From Octopus sinensis (taxonomy: Eukaryota): a stretch of DNA of 64,000 nucleotides. Shown here one piece after another: positions 3,033-63,770 of this stretch. The stretch lies in contig NC_043008.1 of the NCBI RefSeq assembly GCF_006345805.1, positions 23,622,001 to 23,686,000 on the forward strand, given 5' to 3'. The position numbers and the translations under genes were made by a program. Each line of letters begins with the position of its first letter. Position 1 is the stretch's first letter. Under the pieces are notes generated by a model. The model was not told the DNA's origin. It worked only from the letters and a program-made list of their open reading frames with translations, and did not search any database.

Positions 3033-3159
3033 AAGAAGCTTGTTTTCCAGCCACATGGTTCCGGGTTCAGTTCCACTGCGCGGCACCTTGGGCAAGTGTC
3101 TTCTGGTATAGCCTCGGGCCAACCAAATTTTTGTGAGCGGATTTGGTAGACGCAAACTG
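3033..3159 (+). mobile_element. SINE family A, 5' half
   Basis: ccacatggttccgggttcagttccactgcgcggcaccttgggcaagtgtcttct...ggatttggtagacg; B-box-like ggttcag. Confidence 0.85.
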
Positions 3160-14655: not shown

Positions 14656-14707
<52 letters not shown>

Positions 14708-14716
14708 ATATATATA

Positions 14717-14802
<86 letters not shown>

Positions 14803-14825
14803 TATTATATATATATATATATGTA
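14640..14825. repeat. (TA)n microsatellite
   Basis: Direct inspection. Confidence 0.95.
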
Positions 14826-14852
14826 TAAGGGTGGAAAGGAACACACGAGTTG

Positions 14853-23736: not shown

Positions 23737-23916
23737 CCATCATCATCACCATCACCATCACCATCACCACCATCATCATCATCATCATCATCATTATTAT
23801 TATTATTATTATTGTTATCATTATTATTATTATTAATATTATTATTATTATTATTGTTATTATTATTATTATTATTATTATTGTTATTATTATTATTATT
23901 GTTATTGTTATTGTTA

Positions 23917-23957
<41 letters not shown>

Positions 23958-24146
23958 GTTATTATTACTGTTATTGTTATTGTTATTGTTATTGTTTTAT
24001 TATTATTATTGTTATTATTATTATTATTATTATTGTTATTGTTATTGTTATTGTTTTATTATTTATTATAGTTATTATTATTATTATTGTTATTGTTATT
24101 GTTGTTGTTGTTATTGTTGTTGTTATTGTTGTTGTTGTTGTTGTTG

Positions 24147-24193
<47 letters not shown>

Positions 24194-24221
24194 GTTCTTG
24201 TTGTTGTTGTTGCTGTTTTTG

Positions 24222-24264
<43 letters not shown>

Positions 24265-24300
24265 CATCATCGTCATTATTATCATTATTATTATCATTAA
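23703..24300. repeat. Compound trinucleotide microsatellite (TCA/TTA/TTG)n
   Basis: Direct inspection. It explains the poly-I, poly-L, poly-H and poly-N ORFs. Confidence 0.95.
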
Positions 24301-30980: not shown

Positions 30981-32437
30981 ATTTGTTTAACTAGCTAGCT
31001 TGCTATCCCTCTCTCCATGTCTCTATATCTCACTCACTATTATTTTCACTGTACGTTTTCAATCGTTATTTGCAAACAGCAACAAATTACTTAGAGAAAG
31101 AAGTTCACAATCAGTGATAAAAGTAATTTCATGCATAAGTTACTAACAGAAGTAGTTTATAAATTTCACTTCAATCCGTACACTTCGTTAAATTTGCCTA
31201 CAAATTTCTTATTTACTTTTGCAATGTTTTATGCTGTTTTGTTGTTGACGGAATTACTGATAAAAGTAAGTTCATAATTTACTGACAGAAGTAACTTCAA
31301 ACATTTCACTTAAATCCGTACACTTAGTTAATTTCCCTATAAAATTCTTATTTACTTTTGCAACGGTTTTGTGTTTTTCTGTTGCTAACGGCTTTTTTCT
31401 GGTCCCTTCGATACTGGCTCTTTGGTTCACTGACAAATTTCGCTTCAACCCGTACAATTCTTTATTTTCCGTACAAAATTCTTATTTACTTTCTGCCCGT
31501 CGTATTAAGAAATATAATTTCCGTTACCCAGTTATTTTCATTGTTTACTATCTTCTGCATCCGTGTCTTTCTGTATACGTATATAACAATGCCTAGAACG
31601 AAAGTGTCAAATTTGTATACAATGTCAAGTTCATCCAAAAGAATGTCTCTGTCCAGGGAAAGAGAGACAGCTGCTGAAAGAGAAGCATATCAAGAAACGA
31701 ATAGACTGTGCACTACAAAAGCCAGAGTATCTCAAAGTGATGAACACAGGTATGCATGGCTGACAAGGAATAGGATCTCCACTGCAGAACGAAGAGCAGT
31801 TGCAACAACTCAGAGAAGCAACTTCTATGAAGCAGCTTTCAATTATGATCTAGCAGTTCATTATGAAGATGACACTAGAGTTTCCATTGGTGCAATGACA
31901 ACTGAGTGCATACATTGTAAAGCAAGGAAGTGGCTATGCTGCAGTGGTGGAATCCCCCAACCTCCAGTGTTGAGGAAACTGTTGTCATCAACTGACCAAG
32001 ATTCCAAGCACTTCCAAAACAAAATTAGACAATACGACGCTGCACTACAGATGACATGATTTAGAGCCAAGATTCATGCAAACTTTTCAGATCCAAGGTC
32101 AGATTGATTTATCGTCGGATTGGCTCCCTACTTCCTCTGTCAAATAAAACACCAAAACTAGCCTTTTATTGTTTATAATCTATACCTGTTTTTTTTTTTT
32201 GGTTACGAAATAAGCTACACAAAGCGTGATTTTGAATTATGTGTATTTACTTTGAGTTGAAAACTTTCTTTTCACATTTCACTTAACGTCTATGTTCCAT
32301 ACTGGCATTGTTTGGAGAGTTATTACCGTAGAAAGTTGGTATTTCAGCTACTAGCAGTTGAGACCTGCATAATCTAGACGGCGTTTTAAAATTTCATTAT
32401 TCTCTTTAATCCGAGCAACGCCGGGTATTTCTGCTAG
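30429..32437 (+). mobile_element. Internally deleted Helitron (2009 bp)
   Basis: A|TCTATAATATAAA 5' end, ccgagcaacgccggg hairpin remnant and CTAG|T 3' end, with a RepHel remnant inside. Confidence 0.88.
31589..32059 (+). pseudogene. Helitron Rep/helicase N-terminal fragment
   Basis: AFNYDLAVHY...VSIGAMTTECIHCKARKW.CCSGG..PPVLRKLL...SKHFQNKIRQYDAALQMT matches the Helitron N-terminal Zn/pre-Rep region. Confidence 0.85.
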
Positions 32438-33346: not shown

Positions 33347-33432
<86 letters not shown>

Positions 33433-33698
33433 TATATATATATATATAACATATTAGTTATTTATACTTGAAAATATTAAATTGTTTAGGAATTTTGGTT
33501 CATTTAAAATATCTGAATACTTTTTTAAAAATTCAATTGATGTTGAACCGCAGATTATCTTTTTTAACATATTGTTCTCACTTTCCGGTACGGAGTAGTA
33601 ACATTTTGCTGTTCTGCTGGTTCTCAGCTTTTTACATTTTTACTGATGCATTTATTTATTTGTTTTGATTTCTCTAAATCCAGTCTCAGAGTCCATTT

Positions 33699-34358
33699 TT
33701 AGTTTTTGGATGGTCTGTAAAGTTTAAAGGGACGTTTCACGTGACTTCCTATTAATCTTGGGAATCCAGGCGACAATCCTTCATTACCAGAAATACGATC
33801 GAAATTTCTTCGAAAGAGTCTGGATCCAGCTCCATCTCCCATTTTATAGAAACGACTATGACTGATAGCATCAAACTGACGCTTACCCATGCTACCAAAA
33901 TTACTATCTGAGATCGAATCAAATTTTCTTTTACCCATTGTGTTGAACATTCCGTCAGATATAGAGTCGAATGGACGTTTACCCATGCCACCAAATGAGC
34001 TGCTTGCAATGGAGTCAAATTTTCTCTTACCCATTGTATTAAATGAACCACCATCAATCGAATCAAAAGGCCTTTTTCCCATTTGGCTAAATGCTCCCCC
34101 AGAAATGGAATCGAATTTTCGTTTTCCTAATTGTGAAAATGAACTCCCCGATATGGAATCAAAAGGTCGTTTCCCCATTGAACGGAAACCTGTTCCATCG
34201 ATTGAATCAAATCCTCGCTTATCCAAAGATGTAGTTTCTATAAGATCTTCTGGATCAAGTCCTGGATATTCAACGGAGTGAAGAATGTATCGTTTCTTGA
34301 GATCTGGGGCACTTTCCTCGTTTTCCACTGGACGAGATTCTCTTTCACTGGAGAGTAA
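33699..34358 (-). CDS. Terminal coding exon of a multi-copy neuropeptide precursor (pedal-peptide/orcokinin-like, FDSI...M-amide)
   Basis: Stop-free for 219 codons. Acceptor ttttcttttgcag| in phase 0 at 34359-34361. Seven 16-aa units KR-[G/P/K]FDSIxxxxFxx[M/L]G, with variation concentrated in non-motif and synonymous positions. Dibasic cleavage sites and Gly amidation signals. An acidic spacer precedes the repeats. AATAAA-like signals lie at 33651-33660. Confidence 0.92.
   Translation of the reverse strand, partial: LLSSERESRPVENEESAPDLKKRYILHSVEYPGLDPEDLIETTSLDKRGFDSIDGTGFRSMGKRPFDSISGSSFSQLGKRKFDSISGGAFSQMGKRPFDSIDGGSFNTMGKRKFDSIASSSFGGMGKRPFDSISDGMFNTMGKRKFDSISDSNFGSMGKRQFDAISHSRFYKMGDGAGSRLFRRNFDRISGNEGLSPGFPRLIGSHVKRPFKLYRPSKN
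33879..34214 (-). repeat. Seven 48-nt coding repeats (neuropeptide copies)
   Basis: 48-nt periodicity matching the peptide units. Confidence 0.9.
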
Positions 34359-34656
34359 CTGCAAAAGAAAATGTGATACATTTGTCACGTAAAATCTGAG
34401 CATATTAATCTGATATAGATTGGAAAGTTATAATCCATTAGTTTCTGTTTTTTATGTCATGCGATTGTTTATTCCCATTTTCCCATTTTTCTATCTACTT
34501 CAAAGAAAACATATTTTCAATGGTCATTTTCTTATTCGAAGACAATTTTACAAGTTTCGAAGTCGTCATTGTGATATTTGATGTTCACACACTTTGCAAT
34601 GGTTTTAGCGATATGAGAGAATAATACATAAAAATCTAGTTACAACCACAACAATG

Positions 34657-36625: not shown

Positions 36626-37875
36626 TGCTGAAACATGTCAGCTTGACAAAAAAATACGAAAACTGTTGGCAATGCATAGAATGCACCACCTTAAGGCAGA
36701 TACAGAACGTCTTTATCTGCCAAGAAAAGAGGGAGGCCGTGGTCTTTTACAACTGGCAATAACAATGAAGATTGCTACAATTGGCCTAGACACCTACCTG
36801 AAAAAGTCTGAGGACTGGATGTTAAAACTTGTCTCAAAACATGAAAACGAGAAAGCATCATACTCAGTAATAAAACAGGCAAAGAAATATCTAAGTGAAT
36901 TCCGAATACAACAAATTTCGGAATTAGAGACAGTCATACAAGAAACAAGCACAGAAAAAGCTAGGCGCATGAAAGCCCATGCCAAAACTGCGGCCTTAGA
37001 TATTCTGAATAATAAATGGCAAGAAACACCTCTCTATGGAAAATACCCAAAGAGAGCGAATAATGCAGATATTGACAAAGCCCTGACCCATCAATGGCTA
37101 ATGGCCTCTGGCCTAAAATCTGAAACAGAAGGGTTTATCATAGCAGCTCAAGATCAATGCCTACCAACAATAAACTACCAGGCCAACATATTAAAGAACG
37201 GCAGTAGCCCAACATGTCGTGTATGTCGACAACAAAATGAAACCATTGATCATGTTGTCTCCAAGTGCAGTCTTCTAGCGCCTACAGAGTACCTCAACAA
37301 GCATGATAGAGCTGCACAATATATTCACTAGGTAATTTGCAAAAACCTGGATTTGCCCCATGAAAAAAACTGGTGGGAACACAATCCACCTCAAGTGCTT
37401 GAAAATGACCACATCTCACTCCTCTGGAACTTCACCATTCAAACTGACAGAAAGATAGATGCAAATAGGCCAGACATCATATTGAAAGACTTCAGACAAA
37501 GAATATGCCTCCTCATTGATATGACTGTCCCAATTGATATAAATGTATCTGTCAAGACCTACCAAAAACTGAGCAAATATAAAGATCTTGAAATAGAAAT
37601 CAGCAAAATGTGGAACCTGAAGACTAAAATAATACCTGTTGTCATAGGTGCCCTGGGAATGATAGCGAAAGGGGCTGATTACTACCTAACTCAGATACCA
37701 GGAAACCCCAAAATGGCAGAAATTCAAAGGATAGTGCTCATGGGAACTGCTCATATCCTACGCAAAATACTCTCTATGTAATCTCAAGTTTTAAAACAAA
37801 CTTCTGTTGTCTCTTGAGGTCTTTGGGTGAGACTTGGAGCCAACTTGTACAAACATAAAGCAAAAGTCAAACATA
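36625..37875 (+). mobile_element. R4/Dong-like 3' fragment 3 (young; one internal stop)
   Basis: RLYLPRKEGGRGL, CRVC..ETIDHVVSKC..HD, LWNF..DRKIDANRPDII, IDMTVP, KYKDL, VIGALG. ORFs 36666-37331 and 37353-37781 are in the same frame. Confidence 0.92.
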
Positions 37876-39642
<1,767 letters not shown>

Positions 39643-51874: not shown

Positions 51875-52227
51875 TTCTTTGTAAGCCTAGTACTTATTCT
51901 ATCGGTCTCGTTTACCAGACTGCTAAGTTACGGGGACGTAAACACACCAGCATCGGTTGTCAAGCGTTGTTGGGGCGGGGGACAAACACAGACACACAAA
52001 CACAGACACACACACACACATACACACACACACATATATATATATAAATATATACACATATATACGACGGGCTTTTTTCAGTTTCCGTCTACCAAATCCA
52101 CTCACAAGGCTTTGGTCGGCCCGAGGCTATAGTAGAAGACACTTGCCCAAGGTGCTATGCAGTGGGACTGAACCCGAAACCATGTGGTTGGTAAGCAAGC
52201 TACTTACCACACAGTCACTCCTGCGCT
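51875..52227 (-). mobile_element. SINE family A, near full length
   Basis: Head, core, internal (CA/TA)n and 3' domain are all present. Confidence 0.92.
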
Positions 52228-58785: not shown

Positions 58786-59199
58786 CGTGCTGGCGTGGCA
58801 ATGTCGTAAGACATTTGCTTCCCAACCACATAATTTTGGGTTCAGTCCCACTGCATGGCATCTTGGGTAAGTGTCTTCTACTATAGCCTCGTGCTGACCA
58901 AAGCCTTGTGAGTAGATCTGGTAGACGGAAACTGAAGGAAACCATATATATATATATGTATGTGTGTGTGTATATATATGTATATTTTTGTGTGTCTGTG
59001 TTTATTCCCCCACCACCATCGTTTGGCAACTGATGGTGGTGTGATTACGTCCCCGTAATCTAGTGTTTCGGTAAAAGAAACCGATGGAATAAGCACTAGG
59101 CTTACAAAGAATGAGTCCTGGGGTCGATTTGTTCGACTAAAGCTGTGCTCCAGCAGGACCGTAGTCAAATGACTGAAACAAGTGTAAGAATAAAAGAAT
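58786..59199 (+). mobile_element. SINE family A, full length
   Basis: All segments are present, including the aagaataaaagaat tail. Confidence 0.9.
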
Positions 59200-61921: not shown

Positions 61922-62141
61922 GACGCAGGCGTGACTCTTTAGTAAGAAGCTTGTTTCCCAACCACATGGTTTCAGGTTCGGTTCACTGCATGGGCAAGTG
62001 TCTTCTAGTATAGTTTTGGCCCGACTAAAGCCTTGTGAGTGGATTTGGTTGACGGAAACTGAAAGAAGCCGTCGTAAATATATATAAGATAAACTTACTT
62101 GGAAATGGATGTGTGGCGTCCAATCAAATAATAATTATATA

Positions 62142-62459: not shown

Positions 62460-63340
62460 TCTAAGTCGTCCCTCAGGATGCTATAAGACGTTTTCATACG
62501 TTTTCCCCCATTCATCTCGATCTTCCATAATGGTCTTCAACTCCTGTACCCCTTCCATACCAGTATCCTCCGGCAAGTTCTCGATATAGGTCATTTTCTC
62601 CTTCCTCTCCTGGTTCTACCTTCCGCTTGTCTGAGCACTAACTTGTTAGCAATTTCATCGGTATGTCTGATGCAGTGTCCAGCTAGCCTCATCCTTCTAT
62701 GTTGTATCTTCAATGTTACTATTGGTAGTTCCTGGTATAAGTCAGTGTGTGTTGTATGACTCTTGCAGAAGACATTGAGTGCCATATAACAATCACCCAA
62801 CTGCTTCTTCAATGCTTTAGCCCCGTATAGAAGAACATGTTTCAACCCCGTATAGAAGAGCAGACTCCACTGTTGCCAGAAACAACCTTAGTTACAATTT
62901 CCGTGCTAACTTTGAACTCCATACCTTTATCAATTTATGGCATGCGCTCCAGGCATGAGTTTTCCTTACTACGATGTCTATTTCAGTACTTTGTGTCCAC
63001 ACACCAAGGTATTTGAAATTTTCAACTATCTTGAGCGACTTACCGTCTCCCACTTTCACTGACACAAGCATTTCGTGGTTGAATACTTGCAGCTCTGTTT
63101 TCTTTGCGTTACTGTACAATCCTACCTTCCCCAATTCCTGCTCTAATCTGATCAGCACCTCCTGTGACTGATCTGTCCTCTCAGTTAGTAATACCAGGTC
63201 ATCAGCATAGCCTAGGTCAGTTACTGTTACTGCTTGATGCCGTCTAGTTCTTTGGCTATGCAGTTTGAATGCCAGTTCTTCTTCCTTGTCCTCGTACGTT
63301 CTATGCATTACGTAGTCCATAACTGGAGACCTAAGAAAAC
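62460..63340 (-). mobile_element. RTE-group LINE RT 3' portion
   Basis: DLGYADDLVLL, NAKKTE, FKYLG, AWSACHKL.KVW, VES.LLYG, RRMRLAGHCIRH, GRTRRGR. Confidence 0.88.
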
Positions 63341-63770
63341 TAAATTCGAAGAAAATGGAAATTATAGATAAGCAAGAACAATATTCTTTCAAAATGGCCT
63401 GAAGTTTATCGAGAATTACAATCGTGATAATAATAATTTCCTTTATTAGAGGTAATAATAATATAATACATAATGAGTGTTCATGATTAAAAAATACCGG
63501 TTTGTTAATATTGCGTCACAGTCTCTCATTATTTTTTCTGTGATTTATGCAACTAAAACACCCTGTTTCTTAATGCTTGTGCTATTATAAAGAAAGGTAA
63601 AGAAATCCACAGAACAAATATCCCAACAGTTAATATACGATATTGGTACATGTTATCATTAGTAACATTTCAAAACATCTTCCAGTACAGCATGAAGCTG
63701 TTTGCCATTTCTCTACACTACATGTTACTGCACAGCCCTGCATCACATTACAATATATGTTGTGTATACC

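What the first reader, a model, noticed from the sequence alone, without database searches (positions are those of the whole stretch)
33699..34358. Multi-copy FDSI...M-amide neuropeptide precursor in a sea of transposons
Seen: an intact exon encoding GFDSIDGTGFRSM, PFDSISGSSFSQL, KFDSISGGAFSQM, PFDSIDGGSFNTM, KFDSIASSSFGGM, PFDSISDGMFNTM and KFDSISDSNFGSM, each followed by G-KR. Established: KR is a prohormone convertase site and a C-terminal Gly is the amidation donor. An FD-S/E-I/L...F pattern characterises the pedal-peptide/orcokinin superfamily (molluscan pedal peptides, arthropod orcokinins, nematode NLP-14/15), most members of which are not amidated. Inference: this is an amidated cephalopod branch of that family, with alternating P-/K-initial copies suggesting duplication of a two-peptide unit. 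It may match an already catalogued cephalopod precursor; I cannot check that.
Basis: partly seen in the sequence, partly recalled or inferred. Interest (0 to 1): 0.85.

Follow-up and report, generated by a model that had tools for sequence, protein, structure and literature searches.

The report
Octopus pedal-peptide-3 neuropeptide precursor exon
This is the real, intact last coding exon of an octopus neuropeptide gene of the pedal-peptide/orcokinin family, but the same precursor is already in a published Octopus vulgaris transcript catalogue, so it is not a discovery.

Summary
On the minus strand, 34358..33702 plus the stop at 33701..33699 is an open 219-codon exon behind a canonical splice acceptor. 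It holds seven 16-codon units of the form x-FDSI-xxxx-F-xx-(M/L)-G-K-R.

The units are saturated at synonymous sites (pS 0.85) but keep 8 of 16 residues invariant. That indicates old copies held by selection.

The exon matches residues 28-246 of the published transcript 'octopusVulgaris.15171' at 218 of 219 residues (De Oliveira et al. 2019, PMC6425005, Dataset S2). That transcript also supplies the signal-peptide exon, which is not in the window, so the first intron exceeds 29.6 kb.

Orthologues exist in Argonauta hians (NCBI name 'orcokinin peptides type B-like', same intron position) and in an Idiosepius EST flagged as thirteen 13-residue amidated peptides, twelve ending GGM-amide.

The family assignment to pedal peptide/orcokinin holds. 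The amidated branch is not cephalopod-specific. [quoted passage not shown]

The proposed duplication of a two-peptide unit has no DNA support. Verdict: real, well read and already catalogued. No function or peptide detection in a cephalopod was found in the papers searched here.

The parts
33702..34358 (-). Coding part of the last exon (219 codons) of the pedal-peptide-3/orcokinin-like preprohormone. It corresponds to residues 28-246 of the Octopus vulgaris transcript.
   Evidence: ORF and translation. 218/219 identity to octopusVulgaris.15171 from PMC6425005 Dataset S2. Orthologous to exon 2 of Argonauta hians P0002.
34359..34374 (-). 3' splice site: polypyrimidine tract plus CAG acceptor (TTTTCTTTTGCAG), phase 0.
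   Evidence: Read directly. The Argonauta acceptor TTTTCTTTTTCAG sits at the homologous codon. The transcript switches from exon 1 (…EEPTRM) to LLSSERES exactly here.
34215..34358 (-). N-terminal spacer region: LLSSERESRPVENEESAPDL-KKR and YILHSVEYPGLDPEDLIETTSLD-KR. These are acidic linker peptides.
   Evidence: Translation split at basic pairs.
34167..34214 (-). Unit 1: GFDSIDGTGFRSM-G-KR
34119..34166 (-). Unit 2: PFDSISGSSFSQL-G-KR
34071..34118 (-). Unit 3: KFDSISGGAFSQM-G-KR
34023..34070 (-). Unit 4: PFDSIDGGSFNTM-G-KR
33975..34022 (-). Unit 5: KFDSIASSSFGGM-G-KR
33927..33974 (-). Unit 6: PFDSISDGMFNTM-G-KR
33879..33926 (-). Unit 7: KFDSISDSNFGSM-G-KR. The published transcript reads …NFASM, the only difference between transcript and window.
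33807..33878 (-). Degenerate eighth copy QFDAISHSRFYKMGDGAGSRLF-RR. The Gly-Lys-Arg has been lost (M-G-D-G), so the peptide is predicted to be longer and not amidated.
   Evidence: The tail …SRLF(K/R)R is conserved in Argonauta.
33732..33806 (-). Conserved C-terminal peptide NFDRISGNEGLSPGFPRLIGSHV-KR
   Evidence: Argonauta has NFDRISGSEGLAPGFPRTLRSH. The Idiosepius EST ends …RRGFDRIDS.
33699..33731 (-). C-terminal tail PFKLYRPSKN plus the TAA stop (33701..33699)
33655..33660 (-). Candidate polyadenylation signal AATAAA, starting 41 nt downstream of the first base of the stop codon. Its use is not verified.
   Evidence: pattern only

Best explanation
The region is the second and last coding exon of the octopus pedal-peptide-3-type preprohormone gene. 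This is the amidated subtype of the pedal peptide/orcokinin family. The window comes from Octopus vulgaris or a very close relative.

Shown here:
- The exon is intact and correctly spliced in a published transcript.
- It is orthologous to an annotated Argonauta gene with the same phase-0 intron.
- Its peptide units are under purifying selection.

Inferred from established prohormone biochemistry:
- A signal peptide directs the protein into the secretory pathway. It is encoded by exon 1 (MQSMFRIGFMVLLNLFILTRA…), which lies more than 29.6 kb upstream and outside the window.
- Prohormone convertases cut after each Lys-Arg, and a carboxypeptidase E-type enzyme trims the basic residues.
- Peptidylglycine alpha-amidating monooxygenase converts the exposed Gly into a C-terminal amide.
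- The products would be seven 13-residue peptides ending in Met-amide (one in Leu-amide), plus a longer non-amidated QFDAIS… peptide, a conserved NFDRISGNEGLSPGFPRLIGSHV peptide and acidic spacers.
- By analogy with pedal peptides, orcokinins and Sepia orcokinin-B-like peptides, they are released from neurons. They would act as modulators of muscle, ciliary or visceral activity through a receptor that is not yet known.
For: - Exon anatomy and units.
- Transcript: octopusVulgaris.15171 is 246 aa, and its residues 28-246 match the exon at 218/219.
- Orthologue: Argonauta hians P0002 ('orcokinin peptides type B-like') has two coding exons and a 5.3-kb phase-0 intron at the same codon. It is 53% identical over the C-terminal half, including NFDRISGxEGLxPGFPR.
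- Selection: 8 of 16 unit positions (F2, D3, S4, I5, F10, G14, K15, R16) are invariant, and M13 is kept in 6 of 7 units. These residues are written with 2-4 different codons each. Pooled pS is 0.85 against pN 0.28.
- Family: the exhaustive phmmer search gave 136 hits at E<=1e-3. The best is the Biomphalaria glabrata PP3 precursor at 1e-93. Arthropod orcokinins and nematode NLP-14/15-type precursors follow.
- Subtype: a copy-number-independent unit comparison ranks Idiosepius EST (59.4) > Argonauta (53.9) > gastropod PP3-type (46-52) >> PP1-type (29-38).
- Amidation precedent: PFDRIGTSSFTSF-amide and related peptides were detected by MS in Biomphalaria CNS, including forms with an N-terminal basic residue (PMC5455113). 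The Idiosepius EST is annotated with thirteen 13-residue amidated peptides, 12 GGM_amide and 1 GEM_amide.
- Physiology precedent in a cephalopod: Sepia orcokinin-B-like peptides are CNS-expressed, detected by MS and myoactive on the oviduct (PMC9410093).
Against: - No mass-spectrometric detection, in situ localisation or bioassay of these particular peptides in any cephalopod was found in the searchable literature.
- Exon 1 and the promoter are not in the window, so expression from this exact locus rests on the near-identical transcript.
- The one-residue difference (G versus A in unit 7) leaves open a sister species or an allele.
- Cleavage at G-KR-K could give Lys-extended or des-Lys forms.
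- Pfam has no model for the family, so there is no curated domain hit.
- Part of the unit-level similarity to PP3 comes from the shared G-K-R itself.
Confidence: 0.93

Rival explanations
1. The exon is a non-expressed relic or a recently dead duplicate (pseudogene) of the functional precursor gene, stranded among transposons. The published transcript would then come from another locus.
For: Exon 1 is absent from the 29.6 kb upstream. The flanks are full of retroelement fragments and microsatellites. There is one amino-acid difference from the transcript.
Against: The 219-codon frame is fully open. The acceptor is canonical and homologous to the Argonauta one. 218/219 identity to the transcript fits an allele or sister-species difference. 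No second copy is present in the window. Long introns packed with repeats are plausible for an octopus genome (own knowledge, not tested here).
Confidence: 0.04
2. The gene is a genuine secreted multi-copy peptide precursor, but its products act outside the nervous system, for example as salivary, venom, skin or antimicrobial peptides, rather than as neuropeptides.
For: No tissue-expression data for this transcript were retrieved. Neuropeptide families are sometimes recruited into secretions, a general statement made in PMC10570428 (abstract listed).
Against: Every characterised relative is neuronal. Aplysia, Haliotis and Biomphalaria pedal peptides were detected in ganglia. Sepia orcokinin-B-like transcripts are expressed mainly in the CNS, with lower levels in egg-capsule glands. 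An 'orcokinin' gene marks a neuron cluster in the O. bimaculoides optic lobe (PMC9815951), although it is not shown to be this paralogue.
Confidence: 0.03

Closest known systems
Octopus vulgaris transcript 'octopusVulgaris.15171' (De Oliveira et al. 2019, Sci Rep, PMC6425005, Supplementary Datasets S2/S3)
   Same: Residues 28-246 are identical to the window exon at 218 of 219 positions. The exon boundary falls exactly at the predicted acceptor.
   Different: One residue differs (transcript KFDSISDSNFASM, window …NFGSM). The transcript adds the 27-residue exon-1 signal region, which the window lacks. The paper lists the sequence in a dataset but does not discuss it individually.
Idiosepius paradoxus EST DB918490 and the Idiosepius notoides fragment (same datasets)
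   Same: Tandem 16-residue units SFDSI(D/A)xxxFGGM-G-K(K/R). They are annotated there as 13-residue amidated peptides ending GGM-amide, and they are the best unit-level match to the window. The trailing xFDRI(D/S) peptide is also shared.
   Different: This is a decapodiform (pygmy squid), not an octopod. It has at least 13 near-uniform copies starting mostly with Ser, instead of seven diverse copies starting with P, K or G.
Argonauta hians 'orcokinin peptides type B-like' (P0002; NCBI assembly GCA_054771915.1)
   Same: Orthologue. It has the same two-coding-exon structure and phase-0 intron position, a conserved …SRLF(K/R)R-NFDRISGxEGLxPGFPR tail, and peptides ending in Met-amide.
   Different: Only two Met-Gly-Lys-Arg copies against seven. 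Its intron is 5.3 kb against more than 29.6 kb. Identity is 53% over about half the length.
Gastropod pedal peptide 3 (Aplysia californica NP_001191625; Biomphalaria glabrata LOC106074337 = P0004; also Bradybaena and Pomacea homologues)
   Same: Same 16-residue unit in a gap-free register: x-F-D-x-I-x4-F-x2-aromatic/hydrophobic-G-K-R. There are both Pro-initial and basic-initial peptides, and amidation is confirmed by MS in Biomphalaria.
   Different: Gastropod peptides end in Phe-amide and often have Arg at position 4 (FDRI). The precursors are much longer, with 12-29 copies.
Sepia officinalis So-orcokinin A and So-orcokinin B (FLGamide) (Endress et al. 2022, PMC9410093; Zatylny-Gaudin et al. 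2016, not held)
   Same: Cephalopod members of the same superfamily. So-orcokinin A is described as having a 'DSI motif' with a variable C-terminal part and may be the cuttlefish counterpart. So-orcokinin B peptides are partly amidated, detected by MS and myoactive.
   Different: So-orcokinin B has a DS(L/I)GGG core and FLG-amide or PYY ends, so it is a different paralogue. The So-orcokinin A sequence could not be read here, so its orthology is untested.
Arthropod orcokinins (NFDEIDRSGFGFN type) and nematode NLP-14/NLP-15
   Same: The F2-D3-x-I/L5 … F10 spacing in a 13-14-residue peptide, and the multi-copy precursor. Spider (Trichonephila) and Limulus precursors even end in G-K-R, e.g. NFDEIDRAGFRTM-G-KR.
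   Different: Most are not amidated. They have an acidic FDEID core. They lie in different phyla, and similarity is confined to the peptide units.

Membership tests
Pedal peptide / orcokinin (PP/OK) neuropeptide precursor superfamily | Precursor with multiple tandem peptide copies, each bounded by dibasic cleavage sites | tested here: met
   Seven regular copies and two degenerate copies lie between KR/RR/KKR sites.
Pedal peptide / orcokinin (PP/OK) neuropeptide precursor superfamily | Peptide core x-[FL]-D-x-[ILV] near the N-terminus and a conserved aromatic residue about five positions later | tested here: met
   F2, D3, S4, I5 and F10 are invariant in all seven units. The spacing is the same as in orcokinin and PP3 units.
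Pedal peptide / orcokinin (PP/OK) neuropeptide precursor superfamily | Significant sequence similarity to recognised members | tested here: met
   phmmer against 1.84 billion representatives gave 136 hits at E<=1e-3. Named hits include 'orcokinin peptides type A/B' (Trichonephila, Limulus, Dreissena, Argonauta) and the Biomphalaria PP3 precursor at 1e-93. The sequence is listed beside Aplysia PP1 and PP3 in the PMC6425005 datasets.
Pedal peptide / orcokinin (PP/OK) neuropeptide precursor superfamily | N-terminal signal peptide (secreted preprohormone) | tested here: inconclusive
   It is not encoded in the window. The matching transcript begins MQSMFRIGFMVLLNLFILTRA-EE, which by inspection has a basic n-region, a 12-residue hydrophobic core and small residues at -3 and -1. 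No signal-peptide predictor was run.
Pedal peptide / orcokinin (PP/OK) neuropeptide precursor superfamily | Mature peptides present in nervous tissue | not testable with these tools
   This needs LC-MS/MS or immunostaining. Predicted masses are given.
Pedal peptide 3 subtype (amidated PP) | C-terminal Gly directly before the dibasic site in the repeated units (amidation signal) | tested here: met
   7 of 7 regular units end in G-K-R. Biomphalaria has 21/21 or 22/23 depending on how units are extracted, and Aplysia PP3 has 12/12. PP1-type precursors have 0.
Pedal peptide 3 subtype (amidated PP) | Unit of about 16 residues giving 13-14-residue peptides, closer to PP3 than to PP1/PP2 units | tested here: met
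   Mean best unit score is 46-52 against gastropod PP3-type and 29-38 against PP1-type. The BLASTP alignment to Biomphalaria PP3 is gap-free across units. Caveat: the shared GKR contributes to the score.
Pedal peptide 3 subtype (amidated PP) | Orthology shown by phylogeny or synteny with gastropod PP3 genes | not tested
   Short repetitive units give little phylogenetic signal, and no cephalopod or gastropod genome collection was available for a synteny comparison.
Sepia So-orcokinin B / FLGamide | DS(L/I)GGG hexapeptide core with FLG-amide or PYY C-termini | tested here: not met
   No GGG core and no FLG or PYY end occurs in any unit (compared with the description). It is therefore a different paralogue.

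The most novel reading that the evidence does not exclude
Coleoid cephalopods may have turned the amidated PP3-type gene into a lineage-specific Met-amide peptide family. Copy number varies widely: 2 in Argonauta, 7 diverse copies in Octopus and at least 13 near-uniform copies in Idiosepius. A separately conserved NFDRISGxEGLxPGFPR peptide is also present. The products may act through a still unknown receptor distinct from that of the non-amidated orcokinin-A/B-type peptides. In the literature searched here, none of these peptides has been detected or assayed in a cephalopod. Reviews from 2017-2018 state that no PP/OK receptor was then known in any phylum.
Probability: 0.3. Interest if true: 0.4.

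Novelty: already known. Interest (0 to 1): 0.15.

Why it matters
The finding matters little as a discovery. The precursor sequence is already in a published molluscan neuropeptide dataset. An orthologue is named in NCBI's Argonauta annotation, and the amidated pedal-peptide-3 type is established in gastropods.

It has modest practical value:
- It anchors the O. vulgaris transcript to its genomic exon and defines the intron position.
- It shows that the first intron is more than 29.6 kb and repeat-filled, against 5.3 kb in Argonauta.
- It gives exact predicted peptides and masses for peptidomics.

Apart from Argonauta, no cephalopod protein model of this gene turned up in a 5.8-billion-protein collection. 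Genome annotations may therefore be missing this two-exon gene with its huge intron. The family still lacked an identified receptor as of the 2017-2018 papers read here, so well-defined cephalopod ligands remain useful for receptor deorphanisation.

Tried and rejected
1. Search for exon 1 inside the window.
- tblastn and blastn with the Argonauta exon 1 and its flank found only microsatellites and SINEs.
- Two ab initio scans looked for ATG…hydrophobic core…phase-0 GT donor and gave only weak candidates: 41776-41723, 49349-49293, 53535-53410 and 55354-55307.
- All candidates were rejected once the true O. vulgaris exon-1 peptide was known and gave no hit in the window. Candidate 49349 also lies antisense to a 148-aa plus-strand ORF.

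2. Pfam scan of the exon. No family was found, only a meaningless EAD6 hit at E=0.22.

3. Protein-database searches for closer cephalopod orthologues, using the window exon and Argonauta P0002. They found nothing beyond Argonauta itself.

4. Species identification through a transposon ORF. The best relatives are only about 54% identical and mostly unnamed, so this was uninformative.

5. Test of the 'two-peptide unit' duplication. The lag-2 excess in DNA identity disappears when codon 1 is excluded. TRF sees only a 48-nt period. Peptide-level echoes (FNTM in units 4 and 6, FG[GS]M in units 5 and 7) remain suggestive only.

6. The Sepia 2016 neuropeptidome paper could not be read because it is not held. 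The supplement of the O. bimaculoides optic-lobe paper is also not held, so which 'orcokinin' paralogue marks the optic-lobe neuron cluster is unknown.

7. Rfam and tRNA scans of the window found nothing.

8. Structure prediction was not attempted. The precursor is a disordered polyprotein and a fold would say nothing.

Full report
**1. The observation**

On the minus strand an ORF runs from 34403 to the stop at 33701..33699. Its first 15 codons are intron. A polypyrimidine tract and a CAG (TTTTCTTTTGCAG) end at 34359, and the exon starts at 34358 with LLSSERES.

Splitting the 219-residue translation at basic pairs gives the following pieces:
- two acidic spacers;
- seven back-to-back 16-residue units at 34214..33879: GFDSIDGTGFRSM, PFDSISGSSFSQL, KFDSISGGAFSQM, PFDSIDGGSFNTM, KFDSIASSSFGGM, PFDSISDGMFNTM and KFDSISDSNFGSM, each followed by G-K-R;
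- a degenerate copy that has lost its G-KR, QFDAISHSRFYKMGDGAGSRLF-RR;
- a distinct peptide, NFDRISGNEGLSPGFPRLIGSHV-KR;
- a short tail, PFKLYRPSKN.

The arrangement is far beyond chance. Nine FD[SAR]I motifs lie in one frame at 48-nt spacing. The whole window has 12 in six frames, against a mean of 3.8 in shuffles. Two of the other three, the AFDSIP and AFDAIP matches, are reverse-transcriptase motifs.

**2. Evidence that it is a working exon**

Among the seven units, DNA identity is only 52-73%. Eight of 16 amino-acid positions (F2, D3, S4, I5, F10, G14, K15, R16) are invariant, and M13 is kept in 6 of 7 units. These residues are encoded by two to four different codons each. Pooled synonymous difference is 0.85, which is saturated, against a non-synonymous difference of 0.28. 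The copies are old and their peptide motif has been held by selection.

An orthologue exists in Argonauta hians (P0002, NCBI name 'orcokinin peptides type B-like'). At its locus (L001) the gene has two coding exons:
- residues 1-29 form a signal-peptide exon;
- a 5.3-kb phase-0 intron follows;
- the second exon starts with LLSREQ behind TTTTCTTTTTCAG, the same place and almost the same acceptor as in the window.

The C-terminal halves align at 53% identity, including …SRLF(K/R)R-NFDRISGxEGLxPGFPR.

**3. The decisive match**

A text search of supplementary files found '>octopusVulgaris.15171 MolluscaCephalopoda' in Supplementary Dataset S2 of De Oliveira et al. 2019 (PMC6425005). This is a 246-residue transcript translation:
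- Residues 28-246 equal the window exon at 218 of 219 positions. The single difference is A for G in unit 7.
- Residues 1-27 (MQSMFRIGFMVLLNLFILTRAEEPTRM) look like a signal peptide plus a few residues, and they end exactly where the window's acceptor lies.

This gives transcript evidence, confirms the splice site and identifies the source as Octopus vulgaris or a very close relative.

It also explains why my searches for exon 1 in the window failed. The real exon-1 peptide has no match anywhere in the window. The first intron is therefore longer than 29.6 kb, against 5.3 kb in Argonauta.

In the same dataset the sequence sits beside the Idiosepius paradoxus EST DB918490. That EST is annotated 'length_of_amidated_peptide_13' with twelve GGM_amide entries and one GEM_amide entry. 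The sequence also sits beside Aplysia NP_001191625, which another paper identifies as pedal peptide 3 (PMC5814872).

**4. Family**

Pfam has no model for this family. An exhaustive phmmer search of 1.84 billion representatives gave 136 hits at E<=1e-3. Nearly all of those I inspected are multi-copy precursors with x-[FL]-D-x-[IL]…F units. Named examples are:
- Biomphalaria glabrata LOC106074337, the best hit at 1e-93;
- Trichonephila 'orcokinin peptides type B';
- Limulus 'orcokinin peptides type A-like';
- Dreissena 'orcokinin peptides type B-like';
- homologues from the gastropods Bradybaena and Pomacea;
- nematode NLP-14/15-like proteins.

The pedal peptide/orcokinin assignment therefore stands.

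**5. Subtype**

The Biomphalaria hit carries PFDRIGTSSFTSF-GKR, RFDSISDSSAFNRF-GKR and similar units. These are the 'Pep 3' peptides detected in amidated form by mass spectrometry in snail CNS, including forms that keep an N-terminal basic residue (PMC5455113). That is a direct precedent for the window's K-initial peptides after G-KR-K.

The window and Biomphalaria units align without gaps in a 16-residue register. I also ran a comparison that ignores copy number, taking the best global score of each window unit against each precursor's units. It ranks Idiosepius 59.4, Argonauta 53.9, Bradybaena 52.1, the amidated spider orcokinin 48.6, Biomphalaria PP3 47.7 and Aplysia PP3 46.4, against 29-38 for PP1-type and other non-amidated precursors. 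The shared G-K-R accounts for part of this gap.

Thiel et al. 2021 also recognise a third pedal-peptide group in molluscs and nemerteans (PMC8557429). So the amidated branch is not a cephalopod invention. What looks coleoid-specific is the Met-amide ending, seen in Octopus, Argonauta and Idiosepius, where gastropods have Phe-amide.

**6. The two-peptide-unit idea**

Units 2-7 do alternate P/K. But with the first codon excluded, DNA identity at lag 2 (0.656) is no higher than at lag 3 (0.659) and barely above lag 1 (0.631). Same-class minus cross-class identity is -0.016, and 14 of 20 possible partitions do at least as well. TRF reports only the 48-nt period.

Synonymous saturation has erased the duplication history. 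The shared endings FNTM (units 4 and 6) and FG[GS]M (units 5 and 7) are hints, not evidence.

**7. Mechanism**

Shown: the exon structure, the transcript, orthology, selection, and the processing motifs.

Inferred from standard prohormone biochemistry:
- signal-peptide cleavage;
- convertase cleavage after KR, RR or KKR;
- carboxypeptidase trimming;
- amidation of the exposed Gly.

The products would be seven 13-residue amides (masses), two longer non-amidated peptides and spacers.

Function is inferred only by analogy:
- Pedal peptides are present in gastropod ganglia.
- PP/OK-type peptides act on muscle in echinoderms.
- Sepia orcokinin-B-like peptides are expressed mainly in the CNS, are found in haemolymph and change oviduct tone (PMC9410093).
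- An 'orcokinin' gene marks a sparse neuron class in the O. bimaculoides optic lobe (PMC9815951). I could not determine which paralogue that is.

Receptors for the family were unknown in any phylum according to papers from 2017 and 2018. I did not find later deorphanisation in the library.

**8. Context**

- a LINE-type ORF tail at 36666-37331 and an RVT_1 fragment at 62892-63392;
- a SINE-like element of about 100 nt shared with the Argonauta locus at 80-90% identity;
- about 40 microsatellite or tandem arrays.

No other PP-like exon, Rfam family or tRNA gene is present in the window.

**9. Verdict**

Two refinements do not hold: the 'amidated cephalopod branch' and the 'duplication of a two-peptide unit'.

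The precursor is in a published O. vulgaris catalogue. Relatives are catalogued for Idiosepius and annotated for Argonauta, and the amidated subtype is established in gastropods.

What remains open is biochemical and functional confirmation in cephalopods, and the receptor.

Noticed in passing
window 34359-64000 (minus-strand upstream of the exon): The signal-peptide exon of the matching O. vulgaris transcript is absent from the window. The first intron therefore exceeds 29.6 kb, against 5.3 kb in the Argonauta orthologue. The intervening DNA holds retroelement fragments and many microsatellites.
   Followed up: partly
window 52065-52177, 58852-58943, 61989-62074, 3061-3159; L001 408-504, 3178-3292, 6371-6467, 13303-13397, 17429-17541: A SINE-like element of about 100 nt (…GGGTTCAGTCCCACTGC…CCGACCAAAGCCTTGTGAGTGGATTTGGTAGACGGAAACTGA…) is shared between the window and the Argonauta hians locus at 80-90% identity. 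This fits an octopod origin of the window.
   Followed up: partly
window 36666-37331 (+) and 62892-63392 (-): Retroelement remnants. The first is a 221-aa ORF with a zf-RVT-like tail, whose best database relatives are only about 54% identical. The second is a 166-aa ORF with an RVT_1 hit. 'AFDSIP' and 'AFDAIP' at 38193 (+) and 43394 (-) are reverse-transcriptase motifs, not neuropeptide copies.
   Followed up: partly
window 33350-33448, 23793-24299, 14662-14827 and about 40 other sites: Microsatellite density is very high: (AT)49 about 250 nt 3' of the stop codon, (ATT)169 at 23.8-24.3 kb and (AT)85 at 14.7 kb. Several 'ORFs' over 100 aa in the window are only translations of such repeats.
   Followed up: no
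window 31358-32059 (+): A 233-aa ORF without a Pfam hit contains a Cys/His-rich stretch (…ECIHCKARKWLCCSGG…). It may be a fragment of a DNA transposon or Helitron-type protein. It remains unassigned.
   Followed up: no
protein-database searches, not a window coordinate: Apart from Argonauta hians, no cephalopod protein model of this gene was found among 5.8 billion clustered proteins, although a transcript has been public since 2019. Automated annotations of octopus genomes may be missing this two-exon gene with a very long intron.
   Followed up: partly
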